Part shown: positions 81 through 61,334 of the stretch, piece by piece
How the letters are laid out: each line of letters opens with the position of its first letter
How positions within the stretch are numbered: position 1 is the first letter of the stretch
IMG/VR virus record: IMGVR_UViG_3300028045_000001
Span: 62,001 to 126,000 of that record
Strand: one strand, 5' to 3'
Length of the DNA: 64,000 nucleotides
Position numbers and translations under genes: made by a program
Notes under the pieces: generated by a model
Database searches by the model: none
What the model was told of the DNA's origin: nothing
Seen by the model: only the letters and a program-made list of their open reading frames with translations

Positions 81-114
81 ACTGACACGAGTCTCATATG
101 AGACTCGTGTCAGT
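81..114. repeat. Perfect 34-bp loopless palindrome (centre CATATG); likely terminator/cruciform
   Basis: ACTGACACGAGTCTCAT|ATGAGACTCGTGTCAGT, checked base by base; intergenic, 20 nt upstream of a TTATATATTAC motif. Confidence 0.9.
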
Positions 115-134
115 GCAGGTCATCATCATTTCAT

Positions 135-145
135 TTATATATTAC
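135..145 (+). promoter_or_regulatory. Putative early (virion RNAP) promoter motif TTATATATTAC
   Basis: One of 8 exact intergenic + strand copies; resembles the phiKZ early promoter core TATATTAC; upstream of AAGGAG + ATG 195. Confidence 0.7.
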
Positions 146-194
146 TATTATGTATATACGTCACTTATATTAATTTTAACATAAGGAGAAAATT

Positions 195-548
195 ATGGAT
201 AAACTTGCAAAAGCTATCGTAGAAAGCACTAACGAACTATTTGGTCCAATGGCCGCTTTAGATAGAATGATGATGCTGGAGATAGCCACTTTAGAGACGA
301 TAAAGGACACTCACATTAAGGGGGGCAGAGGATATGCGGGCGTAATTATGCCTACAAATGAATTCGGCGAGACAGCAGATATCATACTCGACCGCTCGGA
401 CGCGCTTCTAAATAGTGAATATTGTCTTAAACTAAGTAGATTAAAACAAAAAGCTGTGTTGGATTTTTTGCCAAAGATACAAGCTTTTCTTGATGAGGCT
501 GCGACACTATCTGATGAGGTAGAGAATCTTTTAAACAAGTTTAAATAA
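195..548 (+). CDS. Hypothetical protein (117 aa)
   Basis: ORF with AAGGAG RBS directly behind promoter motif; no family recognised. Confidence 0.75.
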   Translation: MDKLAKAIVESTNELFGPMAALDRMMMLEIATLETIKDTHIKGGRGYAGVIMPTNEFGETADIILDRSDALLNSEYCLKLSRLKQKAVLDFLPKIQAFLDEAATLSDEVENLLNKFK

Positions 549-578
549 AGGGTGCGAATAGATCACAAGGAATGAGTA

Positions 579-836
579 ATGGGAATCGTAAAGGAAAGTA
601 AAGCACTTCTATTTAAGTTAGATGATAATGCGATAAAGATCAGAGATATATTAATGCGGGTCTGTAAGGATAAAGAACAGTATCCGGACTCTTGTAAGGT
701 ACAATCCGAACTCGAAGAGATATATAGGCAAATCGCAATAGAGAGAGATGATCTACTGGACTTACAGCGTGAGATATCTGAAAGACTGACTACCTTAGTA
801 CAGTGGCATAGATATGGATTTTCAAAGTACGAATAA
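579..836 (+). CDS. Hypothetical helical protein (85 aa)
   Basis: Co-oriented ORF in same apparent operon; no family recognised. Confidence 0.6.
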   Translation: MGIVKESKALLFKLDDNAIKIRDILMRVCKDKEQYPDSCKVQSELEEIYRQIAIERDDLLDLQREISERLTTLVQWHRYGFSKYE

Positions 837-863
837 AATGAATTAGCTGAGGAGGGAGGTGCC

Positions 864-1955: not shown

Positions 1956-1958
1956 CAT

Positions 1959-1990
1959 CATAGAGACGGCATTAGACTGCCGTCTCTATG
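1959..1990. terminator. 13-bp stem hairpin after DUF285 gene
   Basis: CATAGAGACGGCA-ttagac-TGCCGTCTCTATG just after the stop at 1955. Confidence 0.7.
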
Positions 1991-2009
1991 AAACCCAGTA
2001 TTTTTTTAT

Positions 2010-2020
2010 TTATATATTAC
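2010..2020 (+). promoter_or_regulatory. Putative early promoter TTATATATTAC upstream of gyrB-like gene
   Basis: Exact motif copy, intergenic. Confidence 0.7.
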
Positions 2021-2133
2021 TTACATGAACCCAAAGGATAGAGGGTAGCACTCTTAATTTTTATGTAGTAATTACATTATATATGTATTGAGGTAATATT
2101 TAGTATTTTAAACGGCACGCATTGGAGAACAAA

Positions 2134-4563: not shown

Positions 4564-4602
4564 TTACGTTATCGGAATATAGGTTTCTCAATATTACAAT
4601 AG

Positions 4603-4613
4603 TTATATATTAC
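4603..4613 (+). promoter_or_regulatory. Putative early promoter TTATATATTAC
   Basis: Exact motif copy between gyrB stop and next ORF. Confidence 0.65.
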
Positions 4614-4662
4614 TATATAGATGTATCATGGCATACTTTTTAGAGAGAAAGGTGGTATAATT

Positions 4663-5052
4663 ATGGAACCAGAGTCGGCAGCGGAGTTAAGGAAGCGGGT
4701 CGCTATATTGGAGCGATCTACAGGACCTCAAATTATACAAAACATTGGACAGTGTCTCACCGGCAATACGTTGAAACAGTTGGCGGTATCTATTCTAGAA
4801 CGAAATAAAATAGGGGTGACTTACTTTAGATCAAAGTGCGATGAGTTATTTAGACAAGAAGGAATACGGAACAATAGAAGACGGAGTAGTCTAATATATA
4901 ACTATATAGATATGCTCAAAACTAAGCCAAACATCACTTGGCCAAAGTTCATACATTTGTTGATGTATTTGGATTTTAAATTACTGAAGGTTACAATCGA
5001 GATAGAAGTAGATGGAGAGGCGCAGACCCATGTAGTTGAGTCAGACGAATAG
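4663..5052 (+). CDS. Hypothetical basic protein between topoisomerase subunits
   Basis: ORF track 4621..5052; ATG 4663 preceded by AAAGGTGG; C-terminal ITWPKFIHLLMYL segment reminiscent of a phiKZ-like hypothetical family (recall only). Confidence 0.7.
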   Translation: MEPESAAELRKRVAILERSTGPQIIQNIGQCLTGNTLKQLAVSILERNKIGVTYFRSKCDELFRQEGIRNNRRRSSLIYNYIDMLKTKPNITWPKFIHLLMYLDFKLLKVTIEIEVDGEAQTHVVESDE

Positions 5053-5068
5053 TTATTAGGCGGATGCA

Positions 5069-5108
5069 TCAGACAGCGCCTTGATTCATCCATCAAGGCG
5101 CTGTCTGA
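5069..5108. terminator. 17-bp stem hairpin
   Basis: TCAGACAGCGCCTTGAT-tcatcc-ATCAAGGCGCTGTCTGA, 16 nt after the stop at 5052. Confidence 0.7.
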
Positions 5109-5209
5109 AGGCTATAGAAATTAAGAAGCATCGCCTTGTATCCCGGCAAGATGTCACTCTAAAATTAAAAAAAATAAATATTGTTTGATTCAAACTTGGA
5201 GACACTCGT

Positions 5210-7435
5210 ATGAAAAAAGAAGGACATGGATTTTTAGGACTAACTGACGATGCGACGTCATCTGACGTAATAGAACAATTCAGCATCGAGTATATGTTGT
5301 CCCTATTGCAACAGCGAGCCAGACATGGGATCGATGGCCTGTCAAAGGTTCTAAGAAGGATAATATATGTTGTTCACGCAGTCAATAAAAAGAAGAAAGT
5401 CTATAATCATACTGGCATGGTCATGGATTATCACCCATCAGGTGACAGTAGCATAAGTGACGCTATGACCAGCCTCATGCAGCCATGGGTAAATGCTATC
5501 CCATTGTTGGACAATCAAGGCGGTATAGGTAGCTACAGTGGAAGCAGGGCTGCTGCAAGTAGGTACCTAGAGGGCATGGTATCCCAATTCACAAGGGACG
5601 TATTCATAACCCCATCCTTTAATAAAACATTGACTATGATACCGGTATCTGGAGAAAAGCTATATGAACCAGAATACTTTATACCGAAAATTCCAACTGC
5701 ATTTATAATGGGGTCTAATGTAACTGCAAAAGGATTTCGAACTAAATCGCCTCAGTATAATTTTAACGACGTGTGCGAATTAGTTAAATATTTATCAGAG
5801 CATATATTGGAAAAACAGACCGATCTAACGGATGAGCATCTTGATGAGATGGCTAAGTACCTTATCCCAGACCCACCGTCGCACGCCCATCTAAGGAATA
5901 GGCGGCAATTATTGGCAGGTATAAAGGAGCGAAGGTTTGATATCCCATTGGCATTCGATGGGCATTTGGACATAAGTAGGTCCTCTGTGATCGTCAAGAG
6001 CATACCGCCTGGATACTCCTTCGTTAAAAATGTCGATGACAAACTCAAAGACCTTATCAGAGATAAGAAATCCTGGCTATGGCCGATACAAGAAAACTAC
6101 AATGATGAGACCGATCAGAGGTCCTCTGTTATGTGGGCAAAAGCCCGGATAGAATTAAAGAGATCGGCGGATGTGTTTGAGCATTTGCATTCATTCAAAT
6201 CAGCCGTAGGGTTCTCTCAAAATAATGTTTATAATTATAAATGGCTATATAGAGGACAACTTAGGGTTCTTAATCCAATAGAAATGCTAACGCTCTGGGC
6301 TAAAGAACGAATGAGCAACATTGGCTCGGAGTACACTCATTCAATAAAAACAAAGATTGAGGAGAACAGACGGTTAAAGGCACTGATAAAAATACAAGGC
6401 CACACCAAGGAAGTTATTAGAATCATTGAGGATAGCGAGGACACAGTTGACGCAAACAAAGCGCTAGCTAATAAATTCGAGATATCTGTGTATCAGGCGT
6501 CCGCTATAACTGCGATGCGAACTGGGCAACTAACCAAACGAAGTAAGGCAGTGCTCATGGAAGATGAGAAACAATCCGTGCGCTCTATAAAAGAACTAAA
6601 TAATGCATTCAAACAAATACCAGAACGGATGTTCCAGGAAGCGGACCAATTGCAAAATAAGTATAGTGGGAGAGCGGGCAGAAGGACCAGTTTTTCTAAT
6701 TTCAGTATGTATGTACAAATATTCAATAGAACGAGTACAGGATTCATCCAGTTGTACAGCATGGATGAATTAAAAAAGAAGTTTGTTGATTTCAAGGGAG
6801 TGCCTATGAATATAGGTAGTTTTTCAAAAGGTCGAGATTATAAGTACATTCTGGTAGACGGATCAGTTATAACTGAAGTTAAAAAAGACTTGCCGAAAGA
6901 ATCAACTGGCGTGCTGGTAACCAGTCCCAATAAACTTATGTATACGGTTAAGCTGAGTGATGGTACTATATGTTATTTAAATAAACTATATGCTATTGAA
7001 AATGGAACGTTGGTTTCTGACAAAGTATTATTGGTAACCAGAAAGGGAACCCTAACTGAGACAGCCACTACTTCGCTCCCTCTTAGGAAAAGTGCAAAAG
7101 CAGTCGGCAATATGACCGATGTCAAGCATGTTGCCAATGTCCCAGGAAAACAATATTATGTCGTTTATGTTGACCCAAAAGAAAAGAATGTAATACGGGC
7201 CACTATGGTGACGACACCACAGGGCAGTATAAAGCAAGTTTCAGTACGAACAAAAATACTGGCTGTGAATAAAATGACTCAACCATTGATGGTGACACTG
7301 CCATCAGACGTGATAAATAGACTCAGTACAAACCACATCTATATAAGTGACATGCGCCCAAGATTTGATAAGTCTGCCCACATCGTAATCGATGTTAAAA
7401 AATTAAAGAAGAAAAGATCACTATTGATTGGTTAG
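5210..7435 (+). CDS. gyrA: Type IIA topoisomerase subunit A (GyrA/ParC-like)
   Basis: DGLSKVLRRI (canonical DGLKPVxRR), YHPSGDSSI (YHPHGDxxI), catalytic AAASRYLE (AAAMRYTE), coiled-coil QAxAI..MR, ~240-aa beta-rich C-terminal region. Confidence 0.88.
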   Translation: MKKEGHGFLGLTDDATSSDVIEQFSIEYMLSLLQQRARHGIDGLSKVLRRIIYVVHAVNKKKKVYNHTGMVMDYHPSGDSSISDAMTSLMQPWVNAIPLLDNQGGIGSYSGSRAAASRYLEGMVSQFTRDVFITPSFNKTLTMIPVSGEKLYEPEYFIPKIPTAFIMGSNVTAKGFRTKSPQYNFNDVCELVKYLSEHILEKQTDLTDEHLDEMAKYLIPDPPSHAHLRNRRQLLAGIKERRFDIPLAFDGHLDISRSSVIVKSIPPGYSFVKNVDDKLKDLIRDKKSWLWPIQENYNDETDQRSSVMWAKARIELKRSADVFEHLHSFKSAVGFSQNNVYNYKWLYRGQLRVLNPIEMLTLWAKERMSNIGSEYTHSIKTKIEENRRLKALIKIQGHTKEVIRIIEDSEDTVDANKALANKFEISVYQASAITAMRTGQLTKRSKAVLMEDEKQSVRSIKELNNAFKQIPERMFQEADQLQNKYSGRAGRRTSFSNFSMYVQIFNRTSTGFIQLYSMDELKKKFVDFKGVPMNIGSFSKGRDYKYILVDGSVITEVKKDLPKESTGVLVTSPNKLMYTVKLSDGTICYLNKLYAIENGTLVSDKVLLVTRKGTLTETATTSLPLRKSAKAVGNMTDVKHVANVPGKQYYVVYVDPKEKNVIRATMVTTPQGSIKQVSVRTKILAVNKMTQPLMVTLPSDVINRLSTNHIYISDMRPRFDKSAHIVIDVKKLKKKRSLLIG

Positions 7436-7441
7436 TAAGTT

Positions 7442-7470
7442 ATGTTTGGTCTCTACACGAGACCAAACAT
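7442..7470. terminator. 12-bp stem hairpin after gyrA
   Basis: ATGTTTGGTCTC-tacac-GAGACCAAACAT. Confidence 0.65.
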
Positions 7471-9085: not shown

Positions 9086-9120
9086 ACCACTATCCCTCTC
9101 CAACGGAGAGGGATAGTGGT
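9086..9120. terminator. 16-bp stem hairpin
   Basis: ACCACTATCCCTCTCC-aac-GGAGAGGGATAGTGGT. Confidence 0.75.
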
Positions 9121-9141: not shown

Positions 9142-9152
9142 TTATATATTAC
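9142..9152 (+). promoter_or_regulatory. Putative early promoter TTATATATTAC
   Basis: Exact motif copy upstream of AAGGAG + ATG 9211. Confidence 0.7.
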
Positions 9153-14031: not shown

Positions 14032-14065
14032 TTTACAAGGGTCGACATATGTCGACCCTTGTAAA
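14032..14065. terminator. Perfect 34-bp loopless palindrome (centre CATATG) between convergent genes
   Basis: TTTACAAGGGTCGACAT|ATGTCGACCCTTGTAAA followed by a T-rich tract on +. Confidence 0.85.
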
Positions 14066-14082: not shown

Positions 14083-14907
14083 TCATCCAATTATTAATGA
14101 CTTATGGCTACCTATGCTAACCTTCCTTGCTTCTACAGCCTCCATAGTATTTAGTGGTATGCTCTGACAACAAGTTTTATTGACTAACTTAGTATCTAAC
14201 AATTCTGTGTATTCTATAGTCGAGGGGGTGGCAGTAAGGCCAATTACTGTTTTTTCTATACCCGAGTATATTCCGAACTCAGATATTTTGCATTTTCTGA
14301 GATCATTGAACATTATGTTTATAACCTCCAGTACCTCCGCCCCGGTAACCCTAAGGATGCAATCAAACTTAGCATTGATTGTTTCCGTCAGAGCAACGCC
14401 ACCTGAGGAGGGGGCCTTGGTTGGCTCAGGGTATAACTGTACTGGATCAATAGTGAACGGTACCGTTGATCCATCTGAAGTTGTTTTTGAAAGAGTCACA
14501 ACATTACTCTTCTCTATAAGTTTCAGCCAATAAAGAAAGTATTCGATCCCGTTAATATTGCGCTTTTCCCTTAGACGATACATGGCCCGTTCGCTTGAAA
14601 TGAGGTCCTCATCAACTGGAACAATCCTGAATGGTATGGGGGTATATAGATCAAGCTCATCCGCACTTGGATCGTACGCTTCGCTTCCTTGATCAGTGTC
14701 AATATTATACTCACCTTCGATGCCTATACCAAAGGCGTGTATAGTTGGATAACCAACAGGAACTTCCTCATCTTCAGCAATCGAATACTTTTTATTTAAA
14801 GTTATATTAGGATTTGGGATGTACGTCATACCAAGTTGATTGAATAATGAATCTTTAAGCCCGGCTATTGTATTGACACTCCTTGATACTTTTAATAAAT
14901 TGTTCAT
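14083..14907 (-). CDS. phiKZ-like virion structural protein (274 aa)
   Basis: FGIGIEG...IPFRIVP.DEDL...ER..YRLR..RNINGIEYFLYWLK pattern recalled from phiKZ-like structural genes next to the portal. Confidence 0.6.
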   Translation of the reverse strand: MNNLLKVSRSVNTIAGLKDSLFNQLGMTYIPNPNITLNKKYSIAEDEEVPVGYPTIHAFGIGIEGEYNIDTDQGSEAYDPSADELDLYTPIPFRIVPVDEDLISSERAMYRLREKRNINGIEYFLYWLKLIEKSNVVTLSKTTSDGSTVPFTIDPVQLYPEPTKAPSSGGVALTETINAKFDCILRVTGAEVLEVINIMFNDLRKCKISEFGIYSGIEKTVIGLTATPSTIEYTELLDTKLVNKTCCQSIPLNTMEAVEARKVSIGSHKSLIIG

Positions 14908-19714: not shown

Positions 19715-19748
19715 ATACATACCTCTCCTACGTAGGAGAGGTATGTAT
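19715..19748. terminator. Perfect 34-bp loopless palindrome (centre TACGTA) between convergent portal and tail tube genes
   Basis: ATACATACCTCTCCTAC|GTAGGAGAGGTATGTAT. Confidence 0.85.
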
Positions 19749-19760: not shown

Positions 19761-20615
19761 TTATCCATTGACATGCTTAGGTAAGTTCGATAGCTCTTTA
19801 GAGATTCCACTTGATTTAATGGCGTCACTTACTTGGGAATAAGTTGGTGGAAGAAGGTTCAGATCAACTTTATGGAGTTGTAGTTCTGTAGCTATCGCTT
19901 TTCCAATATTTCGTACAGCTTGATTGTGCTGCAACATTCCGGAAAAAGCGATCGTTCGATCTGGACTCTTACTGGTAGCTATGTTCTTTTCCATACCTAT
20001 CGCCCCGCCAGGATCTTTCGGGAACATATTCGTAACGAAACCAACATCGATGATATTTTCCGGTCGATGGCTTGGATCAAACTGTATGAACATAATCGAC
20101 ATACTGTACGAAGATGGGATGTATGGAGGTGGATTCTCAAACCGTGAGAATGCGATGCCACTATCTGGATGCTTCGTATCCCAGGCCCATTGGGTGAAAA
20201 TATTCCATACCGGATTACCAAAAATCTCTGGTATTACAAATGATGGGGATATCGGAGATCGCTTTGTTTGGATTGGAACTTCCATTTGTTGCCCGTCATT
20301 ACCAGCGGGTCTAGCGGCCACATCCATAGTGTATTGGATATCGATGCCGGAGATTGTGGTAACGCGGGTTTCAATTAAATTCTTAATAGCCCCCTGTAGT
20401 AACGGATATGGGTTGTACATGTCAGGAAGTTTGATGACTATAGGTACCACCGGCTCAAGTACTAATGGTGCGGATGCATCAATGTACCTTGTCTGGGTCG
20501 CCGTCCCATACATACCGGGCCTGCCAATATTGGCAATGAAGTCGTTCTTTCCAATACTGATAATTTCCGATGCATCGGCTACAATGTTTTCTAAACCGTC
20601 CAATTTATTCGGCAT
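19761..20615 (-). CDS. Tail tube protein (phiKZ gp30-like)
   Basis: 284 aa directly downstream of sheath; NLIET..TTISGID, IPEIFGNPVWNIFTQW, FIQFDP, TNMFPK patterns. Confidence 0.75.
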   Translation of the reverse strand: MPNKLDGLENIVADASEIISIGKNDFIANIGRPGMYGTATQTRYIDASAPLVLEPVVPIVIKLPDMYNPYPLLQGAIKNLIETRVTTISGIDIQYTMDVAARPAGNDGQQMEVPIQTKRSPISPSFVIPEIFGNPVWNIFTQWAWDTKHPDSGIAFSRFENPPPYIPSSYSMSIMFIQFDPSHRPENIIDVGFVTNMFPKDPGGAIGMEKNIATSKSPDRTIAFSGMLQHNQAVRNIGKAIATELQLHKVDLNLLPPTYSQVSDAIKSSGISKELSNLPKHVNG

Positions 20616-26464: not shown

Positions 26465-28064
26465 TATGAATGATCAAGTAATAGCTATAGGTGATCAACG
26501 GCCAGAGGTATACTCTGAGTCCACTATATATGATCCCGATATTCACGGCTCCGATACATCAGTTTTGGGGGGACTCGGTGGACCTTACGTCCCGCAACTC
26601 GATGCTCTTGTAATGGATATGAAAGGAAGGCTTAAGCGGGTAGTGTCAGTGGATCCAGATACCTACAAAGTGACTTATGCCAGGATCCATACAGACTCGG
26701 ATGGAAAAGAAGATTCATTGATAAATTATGGCAATGAAATTTATTGCATCTACTACGATAACGCCATCAATCCGAATAAACTAATTATCGATGCGAAGGT
26801 TGCTATATTTGGAACAAATGCATACGAGTATAGATTGATGAAAGTAATAGAGGGGGCTCCGATCTCGATAGGCTTGTACATCGATATCCACGGCACTGTG
26901 CAAGGGGATCGTATACCAATGATTGAATCGGGCGTCAGCAGCGTTAAGACCTGCGCAAATGCATACACTAATATTGTATTACATCCAAATGAACTTGTGA
27001 ACATGGAGATCTATGACAGCAACGGAGAGATGCTGAGTGAGATAAAGTTAATCTCTTGTAAAGCAAATGCTATAAGTCAATTGCCAGTCATAACTAACCC
27101 AATAGTGGACTTTGTCATACATAGCTCACAAGAGCGAGGCAATGAGATAATCTGCTATTCCGATCAGGATGTAACTGAGATAGGGTTATATCCAACGATT
27201 GTATATTCTGATGGTTCGACCCAGAGCATAGCAATTGATGGGCAGGACTGCATTATGTATGGTCTGGAGCACATAGTGCAACCGTACATTGGGACACGCT
27301 TCAAACTCATTTGTAAGTACTACCCTGGAGTGACTACAGATGTTGCAGATGGAGCAATAGCCCCCGGACTGAATCACCTAATTGCTGAAAAATATGTAGT
27401 GATAGAAGAACGTGAAGAGCATCAAATCGCCAAAGTTTCCTTACTTCCGGTATGGGACAGCAACATGACTGGTTGGAAAATACGAGCGAGGGCATATAAA
27501 TTTGATAGAAGCTCCCCAGAGGACGTCACTGCACAGATACATTGGATAAATGGGATTAACACTGCCCTATACAACTCAGAGCAATTATATAATCTTGAAA
27601 TTAGGGATGGTGATATTGTGCTGCACTCGCAGATAGGGAGCGTAACACTCAGGCAACCTACTCATGCTATCCCATGGATAATTGATACATACGGCGGAGA
27701 CTCCCCATTATCTCCAAGACCTTTCATATCCTGCGTCGAGGATGTTTATTTCATAGATGCCAATAAGTTCCCAGATGTGGGTTTATTTTTACAATCTTTC
27801 TTTATGAACGCGGTTCCACCGTATAACGTCCCAGGAGGTGAAACAGAAACCCCAACTCCTACACATTTCGTTATCCGGGATATTGAGTTCGGACAAATGA
27901 TAGTGCCCGAAGTACTTCCAATCGATGACTACAGCTTTATACTAAACATCATAGAGGATAGTTCGAGTTTGTATAAGGATACAAATGTAATAATTGAGTT
28001 CTTGATTGAAGTTGGATCGGCTGCGTTTTCAACTATTTATGGAGTGCCAGTTGAAATAAAATAA
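26454..28064 (+). CDS. Virion structural protein (phiKZ gp26-like, 536 aa)
   Basis: IYDPD......YVPQLDALV, YCIYYD...NP..L.IDAK patterns; overlaps upstream stop. Confidence 0.65.
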   Translation: MIINMNDQVIAIGDQRPEVYSESTIYDPDIHGSDTSVLGGLGGPYVPQLDALVMDMKGRLKRVVSVDPDTYKVTYARIHTDSDGKEDSLINYGNEIYCIYYDNAINPNKLIIDAKVAIFGTNAYEYRLMKVIEGAPISIGLYIDIHGTVQGDRIPMIESGVSSVKTCANAYTNIVLHPNELVNMEIYDSNGEMLSEIKLISCKANAISQLPVITNPIVDFVIHSSQERGNEIICYSDQDVTEIGLYPTIVYSDGSTQSIAIDGQDCIMYGLEHIVQPYIGTRFKLICKYYPGVTTDVADGAIAPGLNHLIAEKYVVIEEREEHQIAKVSLLPVWDSNMTGWKIRARAYKFDRSSPEDVTAQIHWINGINTALYNSEQLYNLEIRDGDIVLHSQIGSVTLRQPTHAIPWIIDTYGGDSPLSPRPFISCVEDVYFIDANKFPDVGLFLQSFFMNAVPPYNVPGGETETPTPTHFVIRDIEFGQMIVPEVLPIDDYSFILNIIEDSSSLYKDTNVIIEFLIEVGSAAFSTIYGVPVEIK

Positions 28065-28071: not shown

Positions 28072-28103
28072 CTGCCCATGCTAACAATTGTTAGCATGGG
28101 CAG
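28072..28103. terminator. Perfect 32-bp loopless palindrome (centre CAATTG)
   Basis: CTGCCCATGCTAACAA|TTGTTAGCATGGGCAG; no U-tract. Confidence 0.8.
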
Positions 28104-32462: not shown

Positions 32463-32496
32463 CACATCGCGTGTTTTAATAGAAACACGCGATGTG
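32463..32496. terminator. 14-bp stem hairpin ending the protease cluster
   Basis: CACATCGCGTGTTT-taatag-AAACACGCGATGTG. Confidence 0.7.
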
Positions 32497-33791: not shown

Positions 33792-33821
33792 ATAGCAGCT
33801 CCAAACATTTGGAGCTGCTAT
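33792..33821. terminator. 14-bp stem inverted repeat with 2-nt centre
   Basis: ATAGCAGCTCCAAA-ca-TTTGGAGCTGCTAT. Confidence 0.7.
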
Positions 33822-37244: not shown

Positions 37245-37288
37245 TATGTGACATACGAACGCCTTGCAAGGCGTTCGTATGTCACATA
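37245..37288. terminator. Perfect 44-bp loopless palindrome (centre TTGCAA) between convergent genes
   Basis: TATGTGACATACGAACGCCTTG|CAAGGCGTTCGTATGTCACATA. Confidence 0.88.
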
Positions 37289-41198: not shown

Positions 41199-41232
41199 CA
41201 CAGGGCTGTGAGCATATGCTCACAGCCCTGTG
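41199..41232. terminator. Perfect 34-bp loopless palindrome (centre CATATG)
   Basis: CACAGGGCTGTGAGCAT|ATGCTCACAGCCCTGTG. Confidence 0.85.
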
Positions 41233-41263
41233 AGTAAATTGAATGTCTTTTAATTTTTTTCAT

Positions 41264-41274
41264 TTATATATTAC
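41264..41274 (+). promoter_or_regulatory. Putative early promoter TTATATATTAC with no downstream CDS
   Basis: Exact motif copy followed by ~600 nt without an ORF of 60 aa or more. Confidence 0.65.
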
Positions 41275-41900
41275 TATAATGAACATAGAAATTGTGACTT
41301 TACTTTTCCAAGTATAGTTATGGTTACTATGCTCTACTTTACTCCGATATCGGCATTCATATAAATGTGATTGAAACTTGTAGTTGGAAGGAGGTGAAGT
41401 CTAAAGTGGTAGATCTAGTGACACTAAATTAAAATAATTTGGAGTCCCTGATCGCCAGTGCTTATTGATTCATGTGTAGGAGAGTTCTCCTAACCTACGC
41501 AAATTGCATTAGAGTACTTGGAGAGGATGATCTTACGCATATGATGTGGGGATGCGGTCGTAACTAGTGTTATGGTTTAAGATTTTTAAAAATTAATAAT
41601 ACTATTCTTGGGACAATGACTAGAGTGGGGTAGCGTTGTTTTACATTTAATTGAAGTTTAATTTCAGGAAATGGAGATCAAAGATATGTGGGATAGATTT
41701 GATGTTTTAAGAATGTAACGATATAATTGAACGATAAGTTTTTTAAAATAATAAACTTTCGCTTTAGGTTAGTATGTGAACTGTATATACATTTCTCTTC
41801 ATAAGCATATTGACCTATGCCGACTATCGGTATATATGTATTGATGGCGTTCAAAAGGTTGATTTGATAATGGCGATGTTTTGACTATTATCAAATCAAC
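41275..41900 (+). ncRNA. Candidate early non-coding transcript (or decayed gene)
   Basis: Bracketed by promoter motif and hairpin 41858..41900; no ORF of 60 aa or more before 41881; no RNA family recognised. Confidence 0.25.
41858..41900. terminator. 14-bp stem hairpin downstream of sbcC stop
   Basis: GTTGATTTGATAAT...ATTATCAAATCAAC with 15-nt spacer. Confidence 0.55.
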
Positions 41901-41941
41901 TACCTTGATGATCTCAATTAGTTACCGTGTTTCTTTTTTAT

Positions 41942-45249: not shown

Positions 45250-45285
45250 CTCATATACACTTACCGAATGGTAAGTGTATATGAG
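45250..45285. terminator. 16-bp stem hairpin between convergent HU-like and ruvC genes
   Basis: CTCATATACACTTACC-gaat-GGTAAGTGTATATGAG. Confidence 0.8.
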
Positions 45286-45299: not shown

Positions 45300-45875
45300 T
45301 CATCTAATGTGGACAAAGTCTGTATCTATAAATGTACACGCTACCGCAATCGCATCATACTCGTGCTCAGAAATTTTTTCTTTGTCAACCAAGCTTTGTT
45401 GTTTGAAAACAATTTCATTTGAGTTTAGCGTAGTAGATTTAATTAGCGCTTTACTCGCATTCCCATTTCCCGCAAATATGCTCTTTATTCGTCTGGGTGC
45501 ATACTTGTACAATGGGCTCTCGTATTTTCTAAACAACAACCTCTCTATGCATTGTATACACAGCAATAATGCAGGGAATGCGTTTGGGAACTTTCTATTC
45601 ATAAATGCATCTTCGGAGGCATGATAATCAGGAGAGAACGTCTCACATAGATCAGACAATACTTCTTCTATAATTTCCAGTGCTATCAGCCTTGAATAGA
45701 ATTTTTCGATAAGTCCTTTTCTTTTACTTGCTCTGTATGTGCCCTTCACGACGCCAGTTCTCATAACTGTACGGAGATTTGTTTTTACACTATAGTCAAT
45801 AATACACCAACCAAGTTTAGTTGTACCGGGATCTATCCCTATGATACGCACACAATCTTTTGTCTTTTTCATCAA
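45300..45875 (-). CDS. ruvC: RuvC-like Holliday junction resolvase
   Basis: IIGIDPGTTKLGW (Asp), ASED (Glu), GNGNASK, HEYDAIAVA (Asp). Confidence 0.88.
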   Translation of the reverse strand: MMKKTKDCVRIIGIDPGTTKLGWCIIDYSVKTNLRTVMRTGVVKGTYRASKRKGLIEKFYSRLIALEIIEEVLSDLCETFSPDYHASEDAFMNRKFPNAFPALLLCIQCIERLLFRKYESPLYKYAPRRIKSIFAGNGNASKALIKSTTLNSNEIVFKQQSLVDKEKISEHEYDAIAVACTFIDTDFVHIR

Positions 45876-46015: not shown

Positions 46016-46026
46016 TTATATATTAC
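46016..46026 (+). promoter_or_regulatory. Putative early promoter TTATATATTAC
   Basis: Exact motif copy upstream of AGGAG + ATG 46077. Confidence 0.7.
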
Positions 46027-46542: not shown

Positions 46543-46580
46543 CACCCATGCTCCCTCTGTGCACAGAGGGAGCATGGGTG
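46543..46580. terminator. Perfect 38-bp loopless palindrome (centre GTGCAC) between convergent genes
   Basis: CACCCATGCTCCCTCTGTG|CACAGAGGGAGCATGGGTG. Confidence 0.88.
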
Positions 46581-54308: not shown

Positions 54309-54338
54309 GTTCACTATGCCTGCGAGGGCATAGTGAAC
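54309..54338. terminator. 12-bp stem hairpin with possible GCGA tetraloop
   Basis: GTTCACTATGCC-tgcgag-GGCATAGTGAAC. Confidence 0.7.
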
Positions 54339-55991: not shown

Positions 55992-56010
55992 TTGGAGTAG
56001 TTCTATTTTG

Positions 56011-56044
56011 ACATATAGGGGTCTCCATGGAGACCCCTATATGT
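56011..56044. terminator. Perfect 34-bp loopless palindrome (centre CCATGG) between convergent genes
   Basis: ACATATAGGGGTCTCCA|TGGAGACCCCTATATGT. Confidence 0.88.
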
Positions 56045-57550
56045 TTAAAACAAATCAGTTGTTGTCGAGTTATCTTTTTCGTCGTCCGCATACTCTGCGT
56101 ATATATCTTTTACTGCCTTAGACTCCGAAGCATAATCATCCATTATGCCGTTACTGTTAAATTTATATGCAAAAGATTTATCTTTAGCTGGTGTGTTATC
56201 TACGTATCTATGCTTACCTCTTAGGGCCGTAAGATATGGGTTGCCTAAATGATTTTCTTCTATGTGTGTGTACATTGTCAGGTCAAACTCATGTTCGAGT
56301 CCTTTACATACGGCTATACAACTAGGACTAAAGCGTTTAACAATATTGGCGGAGTCCGATGATATTGTTAGGGCTGTATGGTTTAGTTGGTTGGCTGTGA
56401 TATAGGCATAGCCGTGGTATCGTGCATGGTTGACAACATCCGTGGCCAACTTACTTAGTCCTCTTTCTGAATTTTCATTATTAAGTTGCATCTTTGCAAG
56501 GTAATCTTTTATGACAGCAAAGATCTCGTACCCTTCTTGTTTATATTGTTCAAATAAATCTAGATATGATTGGTAATCGAATGTGTCTCCAAGTCTTCTT
56601 ACAATTTTAAAATGCCATCCGTTCTTAGCGAACTCTTTATGTACAAAAGCCACTATATCCCTATCTGTGAAATCTTCTGGTGGGGCAGTATTGAATAGAT
56701 TGAGGTACAACTCTATAAACCATTTCCTGGTATTTTTCATTGCCTCGTTTTCAAGTGATATGAATAGGGCCAATGGCTTTAAATCAGTTTTAGGTGGCTT
56801 ATTTAGTGTCGTTATCCACCTTCCGATTTTTAGTAACCACCCAGACTTAAAGTGATGGGATAGTCCATATATCATCATGGTTTCGCCATAGCAAATACCT
56901 GCGTTTTCCCCCATCATTGCGTTCAGTCCCTGAAGGCCCATCTTGAGGACATTGGTCGATGCGGTTCTTTTTGAATCAGCAGCGAATGCACGCTCCATAG
57001 AATCAGTATCATTGAAATCTATCTCATCTACCCTATCAGTTGTTTGGATGGCCAACTTAGGTGGACTAAATGATCGGGCTGTCTGCAGTACACTATCCAG
57101 TAGTTCATCTTGTTTTGCTGGATTGGACGTGTACTTACATTTCCTTACCCTACTTATCATGGCACATACATGAGCATCGTACGAGTACCAAGTTATGCTC
57201 TTGTATAATTTAGATCGTATGCGCCTACACTTTTCAGGATTGATTGTATTGTCGATTATACACTTTATTGACTCTAATATTTCTGGATCGCCATCTATCT
57301 GCTTAGAATGCTGTAACTTGAGCAGTACATCATGAGCCCTCCCATCAGTTATATTCCCTGACTCATGCAGCATGGAATTTATTATTCCAACCAACAATAC
57401 GTTTATGTCAGAGTTTAGTTCATCGTCACGGTCAACCTCTTTTTCGAATACCTCCAGCACAGATCTAACTAATTCTTTGTCATCCGCCTCATCGCTATGG
57501 GTAATTAAGTAAACAATATCAATTAATAATTCATGATCGATGGTAATCAT
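56045..57550 (-). CDS. dnaB: DnaB-like replicative helicase (phiKZ gp118-like)
   Basis: GLQGLNAMMG..GICYGE, degenerate Walker A GLSHHFKSG, FISLENE, DYL, TANQL, RGKHR. Confidence 0.8.
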   Translation of the reverse strand: MITIDHELLIDIVYLITHSDEADDKELVRSVLEVFEKEVDRDDELNSDINVLLVGIINSMLHESGNITDGRAHDVLLKLQHSKQIDGDPEILESIKCIIDNTINPEKCRRIRSKLYKSITWYSYDAHVCAMISRVRKCKYTSNPAKQDELLDSVLQTARSFSPPKLAIQTTDRVDEIDFNDTDSMERAFAADSKRTASTNVLKMGLQGLNAMMGENAGICYGETMMIYGLSHHFKSGWLLKIGRWITTLNKPPKTDLKPLALFISLENEAMKNTRKWFIELYLNLFNTAPPEDFTDRDIVAFVHKEFAKNGWHFKIVRRLGDTFDYQSYLDLFEQYKQEGYEIFAVIKDYLAKMQLNNENSERGLSKLATDVVNHARYHGYAYITANQLNHTALTISSDSANIVKRFSPSCIAVCKGLEHEFDLTMYTHIEENHLGNPYLTALRGKHRYVDNTPAKDKSFAYKFNSNGIMDDYASESKAVKDIYAEYADDEKDNSTTTDLF

Positions 57551-57610
57551 TATTTATATTCCTAATTATTTTATATAAGTATGGAAATTCTCATAGGAGG
57601 TCTTTAAAAC

Positions 57611-59161
57611 ATGTCACATCTCTTTCACACATACATGGCACGTAGAACTAAAACTGAGTCTACGAAAGATATGCCATTTAGTGAACAAGTCTGGATAAAC
57701 AATGCAACCTCAGCTTACGATGCCTTATCATTGCGACACAAAATTATACATTGTGTCAGGCAACGTTTTATACATTCATATTTTAAGCATGTTTGTGATA
57801 TATATCATGTCGATGGCCCATCTATTTTTACGGACATGGAAGCCGAATTTAATCGAAGGGAGAAGCGGATTGATGACGAGATCAATTATGCTAACGTAGG
57901 AGACTATGACGATGCTTGGTCCATAGCTAAGTCATTCATCACCCGTTGCAGATACATTAAGGGATACATGCCACCGAACGAAGCTCGTGAATTGGTCAGG
58001 CCAGATATTAATGATATCATGGGATTTTTTATAGATCAGAATACAGAAGAAAATTTTGTACCGAGTGTAGGTGGGCTTGATGCAATTAAAGGGATAGTTG
58101 CCTTCATTTTATATGCGGTAAAGCAACATGTTCCGATAACTGAAATGGATACCTTTATTCCGGATCCTTGTGTCCTATATCCAATGTATTCTGGGAATGG
58201 AGTTGTCTGGGTGAATAAAGTCCAAGTAGCCGAGCCGGGCTACTTACCCGAACGCAAGCTTCGGGAAGACTATAAATTTCATGATCATATATTAAGCTAT
58301 TTGAACATGCTGAACTTATCCGGCCAAGATTTTAACGCCATCATGCTATCCCTTTCATGCTTAGCGGTTGTAAATGACTCCCGCTCTGCGACAGGCTTTC
58401 AAAGATTATGTAATGTTGTAAACAATTATTATCTTAGCGGACAAAGACTCTCCAATAAATGGGAGGCTAAACTACCAGCACCTATATTCTTAGCAACAAT
58501 GAGATTTATGAGTGCACTGGTGACCGAGAATAATGTAAAAGTAGACAATCTTCACCTGTTGCATTTCATCTATGATCATGCACCTCCAATATATGCAAAT
58601 CTTGGCGATGTTGTCAAAAAGGCAATTGGAGGCCGGTATGTAAACCAGCATGAGGTGGCTATGCTAAAGAAATATGGCATTTCTAAAATAGTGCCAATGA
58701 AACGTAGCTATGATCTTTATAATCATATAAGGATGAATGCGGCTGACGATGATTTAGGTGAAGATGAATCAGTTACTGAAAATGATACAGGTGAGGGCGA
58801 CGGAGAAGAGGTTACTGGCGATAAGAACGTTGATGCCGGTGACGCGGATTCTGATACTAACATTTCAGATCCAGATGCAGACGGATCTGCCGAAGGGGAG
58901 GAGGAACCTGAAGAAACCCATATCGTAAAGATTGATGACGCTGGTATAGAATTTGAATTAAGTAGCGGTAATCTCTCATTTGCTGAATATATTTTGAGAG
59001 AAAGAATTATAAAACGATTGAATACAATATTGGCCAACCCAGGTAATCTTTCGGCAGAGAAAGTTGAATACTTAAAGTATTTCAGAAATCACTGGATTTA
59101 CTTGGTCAGTATAAACACTCTGTTGGCAATAACAAAAAATCTCAATATTGAAGGAGTTTGA
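57611..59161 (+). CDS. Conserved protein between helicase and capsid gene (phiKZ gp119 position), acidic C-terminal linker
   Basis: AGGAGG RBS; D/E-rich low-complexity stretch then YILRERI...LKYFRNHWIYLVS; ATGA-type overlap with capsid gene. Confidence 0.65.
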   Translation: MSHLFHTYMARRTKTESTKDMPFSEQVWINNATSAYDALSLRHKIIHCVRQRFIHSYFKHVCDIYHVDGPSIFTDMEAEFNRREKRIDDEINYANVGDYDDAWSIAKSFITRCRYIKGYMPPNEARELVRPDINDIMGFFIDQNTEENFVPSVGGLDAIKGIVAFILYAVKQHVPITEMDTFIPDPCVLYPMYSGNGVVWVNKVQVAEPGYLPERKLREDYKFHDHILSYLNMLNLSGQDFNAIMLSLSCLAVVNDSRSATGFQRLCNVVNNYYLSGQRLSNKWEAKLPAPIFLATMRFMSALVTENNVKVDNLHLLHFIYDHAPPIYANLGDVVKKAIGGRYVNQHEVAMLKKYGISKIVPMKRSYDLYNHIRMNAADDDLGEDESVTENDTGEGDGEEVTGDKNVDAGDADSDTNISDPDADGSAEGEEEPEETHIVKIDDAGIEFELSSGNLSFAEYILRERIIKRLNTILANPGNLSAEKVEYLKYFRNHWIYLVSINTLLAITKNLNIEGV

Positions 59162-61254
59162 ACATGTTTCTAAATGAAATACTTTCTAGTATCGATGACA
59201 ACCATGATAATAAGGGCGATCTTGCTGCTGCCGGTGCGACAGCTATTGGGCGCAAGATCACAAAAACGGTAAATCAATGGACTGCCCACAACAACCTTGA
59301 CGGGACAGTAGGGACGTATCAAGTACCAGCTGTAAACTCTGCACTTGATGAGCACACACTCGAATCAATAGGGGTCGAAGCCATAGATGCGCTTGTAAAA
59401 TCCTGTGATATCACATCTGGTTCCCTCCAGGCAAAGAAACTTGTTGCTATCGATATTGCAAAGAATGCTGTCTGTTCTGGACCGGACATCATGTCTCTCC
59501 AAAATATGATGGACCCTATGAACTCGGAAGTTCAGTTTACTGATCCTGGGACACTATCATTCTTCCCAAGCTCTGTCCCCGATGCACATGCATTTGGTTC
59601 GGATATCGATAAGGTATCATCCGATTTACGTCTCACACTTTCAGTGGACATTATGTCATTTCATAATCGAATTGCCCACAGGTTGATGCACGTTAAACCA
59701 ACTCCAGATGCAATCATTCGCTATCGAAAAGTGAAAGCAGTGGTCTTCAACAACCAGGATATGGATGCTGCCACGATGGAGCTTGTGGATCTGTATGAAG
59801 ATGCATCGATCGTTAGTCCTACGCTTCCCAAAGTTATTCCACGGACAGCGAATGGTGCTCCAGAAGAGGGATACATAGAGCCAGGTTCAGATGATCTGTT
59901 TAAACTATCGATTGATGCTTCCAAGCCAGGGTACTCCTCTTACAATCGACAGGACACTATTGCTGATGGTGCCTTCATTGATAAGGTCAAGTGGGAAATT
60001 GGCCCAGATGCCGCTGGTCGATCTGATATGATCTATACCGTGGGTAAAGCGCGGGGCAAGCTTGGATTTACCACAAACTCCGAAGCATCTATGCGTACGC
60101 TATTCTTTGAGACCGACATCATTGTCGACAAAACAACAGAAGATGCCAGTGGTACTGCTGCTGCAGCTTTTGCTGGCATCCATGCGGATGACCAACTGGT
60201 AATTAAGTTGACACTCACTGTGAGACTTCACCTTCGCACCGGCGACATAAATACTACCGGAAGCGTTGCTGCAGTTAAAGTGGAAAAGAAGGGTGGGGGC
60301 ATAGCACAGCCGAGTTCTACTACCGCTCTAGAGGCTATCCAAACAGGCGTGGCGTTTACGAAAATATCTTCATATGCGATTGATGCAAGATTCTCAGAAG
60401 AAAATCTTCGAAAATCTTCTATTGAGATTGAAGCGATCCATTCCGAACTTGCTTACAACCTTCCAACTGGAGTTAACTACTTTTACAGCGAACCACTCAT
60501 GGGGAAAAAGAAAGATGACCGAGCGGTTGAGCTGCTGACTTCAATCATTGGGATCGGCCAGGATAAGAAAGTTGCAGGCGAGATCGAGCAGGTACTTAAT
60601 GATATCACGTCCGCTATTACTGTTACAGACGATAGTTACTCACACAATGGTGCTGGTACAAGCTATGCAGCCGGATCACTGGTACGGCCATTTGTATATA
60701 CTGGAAATATTGACTGTAACGATTTCAAAACACATGAAATCTCAAATCTGCCATATGATGTTAAACAATTTGTTATGACAACAATTGGAAATGTTCTGGA
60801 CAGAATTCATGCGACCAGTTTCTTTCCGCAACAGCTGGCAGGAAGAGCTCCCACATATAAGGTGCTAACTTCCGGGGACATCATCTCCAAGCTTTTCTCT
60901 CAGCCACGGATGGCAATTGCAGGACAACCGGACAAGTCCACCACTCTTGAGGGTGGATCTTCGTACAGACTGGAACTTCCAAATGGAGCCATCATTGAAC
61001 TTCATGCATCTACCCAGGCAGAGCATGCAGATAAAATTATCGGTATCCCATATGTGAGCGATCCAAATTCTGAACTTAACTTCGGAGCAAATTGGACATT
61101 CGGCATTGCAGTGGCCCATTATGTAAAGACTGGCGCGGCTGTTGCAAAACGCATTGTTGCTAACTCAAGGGAGGCATTCATTCCTACGAACCCACTTGGA
61201 TTCCTATTGAGTGTACGTAACCTTGATGATATTCTAAGTAACTACAAGGACTAG
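59158..61254 (+). CDS. Major capsid protein (phiKZ gp120/EL-type)
   Basis: 698 aa; position after helicase + gp119-like gene; AFG..DK...DLRLTL.V.IM.FH, DARFSEENLRK, C-terminal ELNFG...F...VAHY......RIVAN.RE..IPTNPLG..L.V patterns. Confidence 0.78.
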   Translation: MNMFLNEILSSIDDNHDNKGDLAAAGATAIGRKITKTVNQWTAHNNLDGTVGTYQVPAVNSALDEHTLESIGVEAIDALVKSCDITSGSLQAKKLVAIDIAKNAVCSGPDIMSLQNMMDPMNSEVQFTDPGTLSFFPSSVPDAHAFGSDIDKVSSDLRLTLSVDIMSFHNRIAHRLMHVKPTPDAIIRYRKVKAVVFNNQDMDAATMELVDLYEDASIVSPTLPKVIPRTANGAPEEGYIEPGSDDLFKLSIDASKPGYSSYNRQDTIADGAFIDKVKWEIGPDAAGRSDMIYTVGKARGKLGFTTNSEASMRTLFFETDIIVDKTTEDASGTAAAAFAGIHADDQLVIKLTLTVRLHLRTGDINTTGSVAAVKVEKKGGGIAQPSSTTALEAIQTGVAFTKISSYAIDARFSEENLRKSSIEIEAIHSELAYNLPTGVNYFYSEPLMGKKKDDRAVELLTSIIGIGQDKKVAGEIEQVLNDITSAITVTDDSYSHNGAGTSYAAGSLVRPFVYTGNIDCNDFKTHEISNLPYDVKQFVMTTIGNVLDRIHATSFFPQQLAGRAPTYKVLTSGDIISKLFSQPRMAIAGQPDKSTTLEGGSSYRLELPNGAIIELHASTQAEHADKIIGIPYVSDPNSELNFGANWTFGIAVAHYVKTGAAVAKRIVANSREAFIPTNPLGFLLSVRNLDDILSNYKD

Positions 61255-61296
61255 TGACAAGGTCACAGCATAAAGAAATGATGCATGTTTATTGAT

Positions 61297-61334
61297 GAGA
61301 CAACCAGCTTCCCATATGGGAAGCTGGTTGTCTC
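61297..61334 (+). terminator. Perfect 38-bp loopless palindrome (centre CATATG) after capsid gene, followed by T-tract
   Basis: GAGACAACCAGCTTCCCAT|ATGGGAAGCTGGTTGTCTC then CCTTTTTT. Confidence 0.88.

What the first reader, a model, noticed from the sequence alone, without database searches (positions are those of the whole stretch)
81..61334. Nine perfect, loopless 32-44 bp palindromes punctuate operon junctions
Seen: exact dyads at 81-114, 14032-14065, 19715-19748, 41199-41232 and 56011-56044 (all 34 bp), 28072-28103 (32), 46543-46580 and 61297-61334 (38), 37245-37288 (44). Arms are unrelated in sequence; four share the centre CATATG. Ten further stems have loops. Most lack a U-tract. An RNA terminator hairpin does not need its loop bases to be self-complementary, so 9 of 19 being loopless suggests DNA-level dyad symmetry. 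Inference: cruciform sites, a phage-specific termination signal, or palindromes perfected by template switching. The phage also encodes RuvC, SbcC-like, HU-like and gyrase-like proteins, families that act on cruciform, bent or supercoiled DNA.
Basis: partly seen in the sequence, partly recalled or inferred. Interest (0 to 1): 0.7.

Follow-up and report, generated by a model that had tools for sequence, protein, structure and literature searches.

The report
Flawless palindromic hairpins after phage genes
The nine perfect palindromes are real and belong to about 75 flawless hairpins that sit just after genes in an uncultivated marine jumbo phage; they probably end or stabilise transcripts, and their missing loops look like a by-product of DNA copying errors that flip and perfect such hairpins.

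Summary
Observation confirmed. All nine sites are exact 32-44 bp palindromes. Contigs from four public runs support them, including the centres.

Genome-wide (239,960 bp, seawater metagenome, phiKZ-type capsid) there are about 75 perfect-stem hairpins:
- Stems are 12-22 bp: 1271 Watson-Crick pairs, one mismatch, no G.U.
- 25 are loopless. Where at least 10 pairs lie outside the central 4 nt, 25 of 46-47 sites have a self-complementary centre (6.8% expected, p about 1e-17).
- phiKZ shows no such excess; distant relatives of this phage do.

The hairpins start a median 13 nt after a stop codon and avoid divergent junctions. A conserved promoter-like motif follows many of them. They lack U-tracts. 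I read them as 3'-end (terminator or stabiliser) hairpins.

The mechanistic clue comes from near-identical relatives. In genomes 99.3-99.7% identical, 34-38% of looped orthologous hairpins differ by an exact reverse-complement of the loop. Double compensatory changes also occur. This is the signature of template switching or arm-to-arm recombination, and a perfect palindrome is the state such flipping cannot change.

So looplessness is most likely a mutational end state, not a separate signal. No evidence supports a selected cruciform function, but none excludes it. Direct evidence in this phage itself is missing, because no close relative exists.

The parts
81..114 (.). 34-bp perfect palindrome, centre CATATG, co-directional junction; promoter-like core TATATTAC follows at 138-145
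14032..14065 (.). 34-bp perfect palindrome, centre CATATG, fills a convergent junction (6 nt after the + gene stop, 17 nt from the - gene stop)
19715..19748 (.). 34-bp perfect palindrome at a convergent junction; the - gene 19761-20615 is a tail tube protein
28072..28103 (.). 32-bp perfect palindrome, co-directional junction, 7 nt after the stop codon
37245..37288 (.). 44-bp perfect palindrome (22-bp arms) at a convergent junction, 1 and 5 nt from the two stop codons
41199..41232 (.). 34-bp perfect palindrome, centre CATATG; followed by a promoter-like motif (core at 41267-41274) and about 700 nt without a sizeable ORF
46543..46580 (.). 38-bp perfect palindrome at a convergent junction
56011..56044 (.). 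34-bp perfect palindrome abutting the stop of the divergent DnaB-like gene (56045-57550, minus strand). Relative L001 has a hairpin (stem 18, loop 1) with unrelated arms at the same position.
61297..61334 (.). 38-bp perfect palindrome 42 nt after the major capsid gene (59158-61254). Relative L001 also has a 38-bp perfect palindrome after its capsid gene, with the same centre CCATATGG and different arms.
1958..1991 (+). looped member of the same class (stem 14, loop 6), 2 nt after a stop codon
5069..5108 (+). looped member (stem 17, loop 6) between the gyrB-side genes and gyrA
7442..7470 (+). looped member (stem 12, loop 5) after gyrA (5210-7435)
9086..9120 (+). looped member (stem 16, loop 3); promoter-like core at 9145-9152
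32463..32496 (+). looped member (stem 14, loop 6)
33792..33821 (+). near-loopless member (stem 14, loop 2)
45250..45285 (.). looped member (stem 16, loop 4) at the convergent junction next to RuvC (45300-45875, minus strand)
54309..54338 (+). looped member (stem 12, loop 6)

Best explanation
The nine palindromes are not a separate element. They are the loopless third of about 75 long hairpins with flawless stems, placed directly after stop codons throughout this jumbo phage. At the RNA level these hairpins most likely mark transcript 3' ends, as terminators for the phage's own RNA polymerase and/or barriers against 3' exonucleases (inferred from position). Their perfect dyad symmetry has a DNA-level, mutational cause. 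During replication or recombination the two arms template or recombine with each other. This inverts the loop, copies changes from one arm to the other, and can create or perfect a palindrome in one event. A perfect palindrome is the only state that further flipping cannot alter, so it accumulates until a point mutation in the neutral centre reopens a loop. Shown: the anatomy and statistics in this phage, and the loop flip-flop and compensatory changes in relatives and in phiKZ. Inferred: that the same process acts in this phage, and that it, rather than selection, produces looplessness.
For: Class and placement:
- About 75 perfect-stem hairpins, with a median 13 nt from stop codon to hairpin and 77.5 nt from hairpin to the next start.
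- 13 of 22 convergent junctions carry one, against 2 of 22 divergent junctions (p=0.001).
- About 40 intergenic copies of a conserved TTTATATATTAC promoter-like motif; of the 84 core matches, 23 lie less than 150 nt after a hairpin.
- The phage encodes an RNA polymerase beta-like subunit.
- RNA folds of -23 to -35 kcal/mol.

DNA-level signature in this phage:
- 1271 Watson-Crick pairs, 1 mismatch, no G.U.
- Loops of 0 and 1 nt are over-represented.

Clade habit:
- Five relatives (capsid identity 25-30%) have 35-41 such hairpins per 100 kb, with 15-36% loopless (p=1e-11 to 1e-31).
- Hairpin positions after the capsid and DnaB-like genes are conserved while the arms have turned over.

Dynamics:
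- Between genomes 99.3-99.7% identical, 16-19 of 50-53 looped orthologous hairpins per pair differ by an exact reverse-complement of the loop. Across all pairwise comparisons, 48 of 69 changed loops of 2 nt or more are exact inversions.
- The odd genome out is evenly spread (8/9/7) while SNPs are 37/113/38, so flipping is far faster than substitution.
- There are compensatory double changes, a matched 1-bp deletion in both arms, and one cluster of three changes that separates a quasi-palindrome from a perfect one.
- The cultured isolates phiKZ and PaSz-1 also show exact loop inversions, so the effect is not a metagenome artefact.
- Loopless centres change at about the neutral rate.

The mechanism and its footprints are described in PMC8794818.
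Against: - No close relative or population variant of this phage exists in the collections. Six looped hairpins had the same orientation in two samples, so flipping is not shown in this genome itself.
- No transition from looped to loopless was caught with clear polarity. The prediction that loopless centres are flip/flop hybrids is only loosely met: ATAT and, in G003, AATT and TTAA fit, but CATG in this phage is not predicted.
- CATATG is over-represented among centres (6 of 25, p=3e-6), which could reflect selection.
- phiKZ shows loop inversions but no loopless excess, so flipping alone does not guarantee looplessness.
- Some compensatory changes lie in locally divergent stretches and may be imported by recombination.
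- Transcript ends were not measured.
Confidence: 0.6

Rival explanations
1. The perfect dyads are selected DNA-level sites. They would extrude as cruciforms in supercoiled phage DNA and be used by phage proteins such as the gyrase, the RuvC resolvase or the SMC/SbcC-like protein, for example for topology control, replication or polymerase arrest.
For: All nine are 32-44 bp with AT-rich centres, long enough for extrusion by established DNA biophysics (my knowledge, not tested). The phage encodes GyrA, GyrB, RuvC and an SMC_N-like protein in the same window. No G.U pairs in 1271 pairs. CATATG and ATAT centres are over-represented.
Against: Placement follows gene 3' ends and avoids divergent junctions, where negative supercoiling would favour extrusion. 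The arms have no common sequence. Loopless and looped hairpins form one continuous class. In relatives the centres mutate at about the neutral rate. A non-self-complementary 4-nt loop extrudes as well, so no known cruciform role needs zero spacer. The HU-like gene was not found.
Confidence: 0.1
2. Looplessness is selected because the hairpins act as bidirectional terminators at convergent genes, where both RNA strands must fold into the same hairpin.
For: In the window, 6 of the 7 hairpins at convergent junctions are loopless. Genome-wide it is 7 of 13 convergent against 16 of 52 co-directional. Pure Watson-Crick stems are what a two-strand terminator needs.
Against: The genome-wide association is not significant (Fisher p=0.19). 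Most loopless palindromes (16 or more) lie between co-directional genes. Function on both strands requires Watson-Crick stems, not a self-complementary loop.
Confidence: 0.1
3. The hairpins are RNA processing or stability elements rather than terminators: long perfect stems cut by a host RNase III or blocking 3' exonucleases, as in the Mimiviridae 'hairpin rule'. This rivals only the RNA-level role, not the origin of looplessness.
For: Stems are 12-22 bp without a U-tract. Palindromes unrelated in sequence at gene ends resemble the Mimivirus rule (PMC4402537, abstract as listed).
Against: No RNase III domain is encoded in the genome. The host is unknown. No transcript data exist.
Confidence: 0.15
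4. The palindromes are assembly or sequencing artefacts.
For: Logan contigs break at each palindrome and no single Logan contig bridges one.
Against: The breaks are the expected behaviour of a k=31 graph at a palindrome. Unitigs of 32-34 nt cover the centres with 0 differences at about 2x depth in runs from different samples and studies (X1, X2). Flanks have equal depth. The same habit occurs in independent assemblies of relatives.
Confidence: 0.01

Closest known systems
Template-switch mutations that create and maintain RNA hairpins (Monttinen and Loytynoja, PNAS 2022, PMC8794818); quasi-palindrome correction in bacteria and phage T4 (classical work, from my knowledge)
   Same: Perfect stems, loop inversions, multi-base compensatory changes and one-step creation of reverse-complement repeats are exactly the footprints seen in the relatives.
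   Different: Here the process appears to shape a whole genome's terminator set. A third of the hairpins are loopless and about 35% of loops are flipped between genomes 99.5% identical. In the rRNA and microRNA data such events are rare.
Small hairpin-loop inversions (flip-flop) in chloroplast non-coding DNA
   Same: Recurrent inversion of a few nucleotides flanked by short inverted repeats, homoplasious among close relatives. The comparison rests on my knowledge; the plastome papers found were not read.
   Different: A phage genome, at gene 3' ends, with much longer flawless arms and a large loopless class.
Intrinsic (Rho-independent) terminators and phiKZ-type jumbo-phage terminators
   Same: Stem-loops directly after genes, some shared by convergent genes. 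In the phiKZ-like phage 201phi2-1 many mapped 3' ends (80 of 132) are also not classical intrinsic terminators (PMC11512511).
   Different: No U-tract. Stems are 12-22 bp without mismatch or G.U, against mostly 9-13 bp in phiKZ. The loopless excess is absent from phiKZ.
Mimiviridae 'hairpin rule' (palindromic 3'-end signals, PMC4402537)
   Same: Palindromes of unrelated sequence mark the 3' ends of most transcription units in a giant virus that uses its own transcription machinery.
   Different: No RNase III-like gene is encoded here. Polyadenylation is unknown. This is a bacterial virus.
Survey of perfect inverted repeats across 118,019 genomes (PMC13155455)
   Same: It reports that viral perfect inverted repeats prefer spacers of 0 or 4 bp, and that spacers near terminators carry excess substitutions.
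   Different: The survey does not name template switching, and mentions inversions only for very large repeats. It gives no lineage-level picture such as this one.

Membership tests
Canonical intrinsic terminator | Stable stem-loop just downstream of a gene | tested here: met
   Median 13 nt after the stop codon; folding energy -13 to -44 kcal/mol
Canonical intrinsic terminator | U-tract immediately 3' of the stem | tested here: not met
   5 or more T in the first 8 nt in 10% of hairpins, against 11.5% for intergenic background; only a diffuse T-rich zone at +5 to +20
phiKZ-type terminator hairpins | Same distribution of stem and loop lengths as in phiKZ | tested here: not met
   phiKZ stems are mostly 9-11 bp with loops of 4-6 nt and no loopless excess (7 of 69, p=0.2), against 25 of 46 here
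Template-switch-shaped hairpins | Exact loop inversions between close relatives | tested here: met
   Met in relatives: 16-19 of 50-53 looped orthologues per pair, and also in phiKZ vs PaSz-1. Not testable in this genome itself: no close relative, and no variant in the reads.
Template-switch-shaped hairpins | Multi-base changes that keep or restore perfect pairing in one step | tested here: met
   Eight or more compensated pairs where about 0.02 are expected at 0.7% divergence; a matched deletion in both arms; a cluster of three changes between a quasi-palindrome and a perfect one. Some may be recombination imports.
Template-switch-shaped hairpins | Observed conversion of a looped hairpin into a loopless one by a single event, with known polarity | tested here: inconclusive
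   Changes between loop 8 and loop 0 and between loop 5 and loop 1 were seen, but with unclear polarity and not as simple flip/flop hybrids
Mimiviridae hairpin rule | Virus-encoded RNase III-like hairpin-cleaving enzyme | tested here: not met
   No PF14622 match in the 240-kb genome; the control genomes match
Mimiviridae hairpin rule | Transcript cleavage and polyadenylation at the hairpin | not testable with these tools
   No RNA runs hold the phage
REP/BIME or MITE-like repeated palindromic elements | Copies share a common sequence | tested here: not met
   Only one shared 9-mer pair; shared 8-mers within the range of shuffled arms
Cruciform-forming sites | Perfect inverted repeat of about 30 bp or more with a very short spacer | tested here: met
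   32-44 bp with zero spacer; the length threshold comes from my knowledge of DNA biophysics
Cruciform-forming sites | Extrusion in supercoiled DNA, or use by a structure-specific protein | not testable with these tools
   Needs nuclease mapping on supercoiled clones

The most novel reading that the evidence does not exclude
Perfect, loopless dyads are themselves selected in this lineage of marine jumbo phages as DNA-level signals. For example, cruciforms or hairpins in the non-template strand could stop the phage's own RNA polymerase, or load its gyrase or SMC-like proteins. That would explain the missing U-tracts, the total absence of G.U pairs and the preferred ATAT and CATATG centres.
Probability: 0.1. 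Interest if true: 0.85.

Novelty: new variant of a known kind. Interest (0 to 1): 0.55.

Why it matters
If the reading holds, this lineage is a natural, genome-wide example of template switching building and maintaining functional RNA hairpins, an idea so far supported mainly by sparse events in rRNA and microRNA genes.

It offers dozens of independent hairpins per genome in which flip rate, arm length and loop length can be related. It would also explain why perfect inverted repeats in viral genomes so often have zero spacer.

In practice, loop flip-flop produces clusters of apparent SNPs at terminators, which can mislead strain typing and selection scans. Long U-less perfect hairpins paired with a strong conserved promoter are candidate insulating parts for synthetic biology.

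It also cautions against reading perfect dyad symmetry as evidence of a DNA-binding or cruciform function.

Tried and rejected
- **Close relatives of this phage.** None in the INPHARED phage collection by DNA or capsid protein, none in IMG/VR by the single-protein scan, and only 29%-identical capsids among 5.8 billion proteins. An exact-pattern scan of the JGI metagenomes returned only the source contig.
- **Population variants.** Logan contigs of four runs show no other letters and no inverted loops at 6 looped hairpins. Contigs drop rare variants, so this is weak. No RNA run was found.
- **More members of the G001-G003 group.** None beyond the three.
- **Convergent-junction explanation.** Not significant genome-wide.
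- **Repeat-family explanation.** Rejected.
- **Flip/flop-hybrid prediction of centre sequences.** Inconclusive.
- **Rfam and tRNA scans of the window.** Nothing found.
- **Gene families in the genome.** No match for the HU, RecA or RNase III families.
- **Assembly ambiguity as the cause of loop inversions.** Rejected. The inner k-mers of a hairpin are orientation-blind, but arms of 12-19 bp are shorter than the usual k, so reads fix the orientation. Cultured isolates show the same events.
- **Not used.** The protein-structure and complex-prediction tools, because no claim here rests on them.


Full report
**1. The observation**

The nine intervals are exact palindromes: five of 34 bp, one of 32, two of 38 and one of 44. 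Four have the centre CATATG.

A scan for perfect stems of at least 10 bp with loops up to 12 nt finds 21 sites in the window:
- the nine loopless palindromes;
- eight hairpins with stems of 12-17 bp and loops of 2-6 nt;
- four short or AT-only ones.

The window is positions 62001-126000 of a single 239,960-bp contig with 39% G+C. IMG/VR classes the contig as complete, with direct terminal repeats. It comes from a seawater metagenome.

The phage has these recognisable genes:
- a phiKZ-type major capsid protein, a gp29-like protein, GyrA and GyrB;
- RuvC, a divergent DnaB-like ATPase and a tail tube protein;
- an RNA polymerase beta-like gene.

It has no close relative in any collection searched. 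The nearest capsid proteins are 29% identical.

**2. Genome-wide anatomy**

The genome holds about 75 perfect-stem hairpins with stems of 12-22 bp:

| Loop length (nt) | 0 | 1 | 2 | 3 | 4 | 5 | 6 | 7 | 9 |
|---|---|---|---|---|---|---|---|---|---|
| Hairpins | 25 | 4 | 9 | 6 | 12 | 5 | 10 | 2 | 2 |

To avoid ascertainment bias I required at least 10 perfect pairs outside the central four bases. Of 46-47 such sites, 25 have a fully self-complementary centre, where base composition predicts 6.8% (p about 1e-17).

A mismatch-tolerant scan finds 82 hairpins with 1271 Watson-Crick pairs and a single internal mismatch. No stem continues through a G.U pair. The arms share no sequence family.

As RNA, each of the nine folds into a 14-20-bp stem with a tetraloop, at -23 to -35 kcal/mol.

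**3. The palindromes are real**

Logan contigs of four public runs, at least two from different samples and studies, match the stretch with no differences. Contigs break at each palindrome, as a k=31 graph must.

Unitigs of 32-34 nt cover the centres at roughly double depth: 135 against 77-80, and 157 against 80. That doubling is what canonical k-mer counting gives only if the sequence really equals its own reverse complement.

**4. Where the hairpins sit**

I used a simple gene call of 246 genes with 92% coding.
- Co-directional hairpins start a median 13 nt after the upstream stop codon and end a median 77.5 nt before the next start.
- 13 of 22 convergent junctions carry a hairpin, against 2 of 22 divergent junctions (p=0.001).
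- An immediate U-tract is no more frequent than in background.
- A conserved motif of about 30 nt ending in TTTATATATTAC occurs about 40 times in intergenic DNA, 45-65 nt before gene starts. Of the 84 core matches, 23 lie less than 150 nt after a hairpin.

This hairpin-promoter-gene order is that of transcription-unit boundaries. I therefore read the class as transcript 3'-end hairpins, acting as terminators and/or stabilisers. This is an inference from position; no RNA data exist.

Loopless members are somewhat commoner at convergent junctions (7 of 13 against 16 of 52), but not significantly so (p=0.19).

**5. Is the habit typical?**

It is not typical of phiKZ or of Yersinia phage phiR1-37.
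- The complete phiKZ genome has mostly 9-11-bp stems and loops of 4-6 nt.
- phiKZ has no excess of self-complementary centres: 7 of 69 and 5 of 40, p about 0.2.

An alignment of the three nearest capsid proteins retrieved 16 IMG/VR loci. All have long perfect hairpins.

I fetched five whole contigs (G001-G005, 198-302 kb). They carry 35-41 such hairpins per 100 kb, of which 15-36% are loopless. The centre test gives p=1e-11 to 1e-31.

In relative L001 the gene order DnaB-like, unknown gene, capsid is conserved, and hairpins sit at the same two gene ends as in the window. The one after the capsid gene is again a 38-bp perfect palindrome with the centre CCATATGG but entirely different arms. So position is conserved while sequence turns over.

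**6. How the hairpins change**

G001, G002 and G003 are 99.3-99.7% identical. G004 and G005 are 96.5% identical. I compared orthologous hairpins using their flanks.

*In the G001-G003 trio:*
- 50-53 looped hairpins are comparable per pair.
- 16-19 of them differ by an exact reverse-complement of the loop (loops of 1-7 nt), for example ATTAC against GTAAT and CTTAAAA against TTTTAAG.
- Few other kinds of change occur.

*Across all pairwise comparisons,* 48 of 69 changed loops of 2 nt or more are exact inversions.

*Among 44 looped hairpins shared by all three genomes:*
- 24 are inverted in one genome.
- The odd genome out is spread evenly (8, 9, 7), whereas SNPs single out G002 three times as often (37, 113, 38).
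- Flipping is therefore roughly a hundred times faster per hairpin than substitution per site and is partly saturated, or both orientations coexist within populations.

*In the G004/G005 pair* there are:
- 6 exact inversions;
- 3 inversions with added substitutions;
- about 8 compensated pairs;
- a matched one-base deletion in both arms;
- a change between loop 8 and loop 0.

*One site in the trio* differs by three clustered changes that separate a quasi-palindrome from a perfect 24-bp palindrome, centre included.

Loopless centres change about as often as neutral sites would: 1 of about 25 in the trio and 1-2 of about 10 in the G004/G005 pair.

The events are not metagenome artefacts. The cultured isolates phiKZ and PaSz-1 (98.2% identical) show 5 exact loop inversions and 3 with added substitutions among about 69 looped hairpins. 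Relative to substitution, that rate is about 20-fold lower, in keeping with phiKZ's shorter arms.

**7. Mechanism**

Three footprints were seen: loop inversion, arm-to-arm copying, and one-step creation of perfect stems. These are the described footprints of replication template switching (PMC8794818). Recombination between the arms would give the same result.

The following is my reasoning, not a computed result. Any event that joins the left half of the 'flip' form to the right half of the 'flop' form yields a fully self-complementary centre. Such an event could be a switch, a crossover or patch repair within the loop. Odd loops would leave one central base.

A zero-spacer inverted copy can also arise directly by a switch to the opposite strand. 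A perfect palindrome is unchanged by further flips, so only point mutation removes it.

With a neutral centre of about 4 nt, a perfecting or birth rate of only about twice the per-site substitution rate would keep a third of the hairpins loopless. The flip rate is about 50 times higher than that.

The model accounts for the excess of loops of 0 and 1 nt, the flawless stems, the unrelated arms, and the continuity between loopless and looped members.

Its weak points are these:
- There is no direct evidence in this phage.
- No transition from looped to loopless has been polarised.
- The predicted centre sequences fit only loosely.
- CATATG is over-represented among centres (6 of 25, p=3e-6).

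**8. Alternatives**

A selected cruciform or dyad function cannot be excluded, but nothing specific supports it. Placement follows transcription rather than supercoiling logic, centres are not conserved, and no known cruciform role needs a zero spacer. The HU family is absent, and the SbcC-like assignment rests on a sub-threshold SMC_N hit.

Bidirectional termination explains pure Watson-Crick stems but not self-complementary loops, and most loopless sites lie between co-directional genes.

A processing role like the Mimivirus hairpin rule is possible for the RNA. However, no RNase III is encoded.

**9. Verdict**

The elements are 3'-end hairpins of a known general kind, in an unusual form: long, flawless, without U-tracts, and one third loopless. 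The form is shared by a poorly known clade of uncultivated jumbo phages.

The novelty lies in the scale and speed of the process in this lineage, not in a new kind of element.

Noticed in passing
window 138-145, 2013-2020, 9145-9152, 41267-41274, 46019-46026, 61418-61425 (cores); about 40 intergenic copies genome-wide: A strongly conserved promoter-like motif of about 30 nt: TCA, about 10 nt, a T-run, then TTTATATATTAC followed by TAT.ATG. It lies 45-65 nt before gene starts, and 23 of the 84 core matches lie less than 150 nt after a hairpin. It is probably a promoter class of the phage's own RNA polymerase.
   Followed up: partly
window 41233-41941: About 700 nt behind a strong copy of the promoter-like motif contain no ORF longer than 58 aa. 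The first 296 nt fold better than shuffles (z=-2.45), and there is no Rfam match. This is a candidate non-coding RNA or small-protein locus.
   Followed up: partly
G001-G003 (IMG/VR 3300045988 contigs), whole length: Loops of 1-5 nt flip between these near-identical genomes, while loops of 6 nt or more stayed fixed in all but two of about 36 pairwise comparisons (two 7-nt loops flipped). This suggests that a hairpin intermediate limits the rate. A-only and T-only loops dominate.
   Followed up: partly
phiKZ NC_004629 against PaSz-1 MN871480, e.g. phiKZ 14839-14875, 27659-27680, 235798-235826: Exact loop inversions also separate cultured phiKZ-group isolates, so flip-flop of terminator loops appears to be a general and little-noted source of clustered 'SNPs' in phage genomes.
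   Followed up: partly
genome 56064-56088 (outside the window): A (TA)12 run, the only simple-repeat 'palindrome' in the genome. It was excluded from all counts.
   Followed up: no
window 56045-61254 and L001 6721-12175: The gene order DnaB-like ATPase (minus strand), unknown protein of about 520-560 aa, major capsid protein is conserved between this phage and relatives whose capsids are only 29% identical.
   Followed up: partly
whole genome: No Pfam match to the HU, RecA or RNase III families. A Metallophos (SbcD/Mre11-like) gene lies at genome 143398 and an RNA polymerase beta-like gene at genome 176019.
   Followed up: yes
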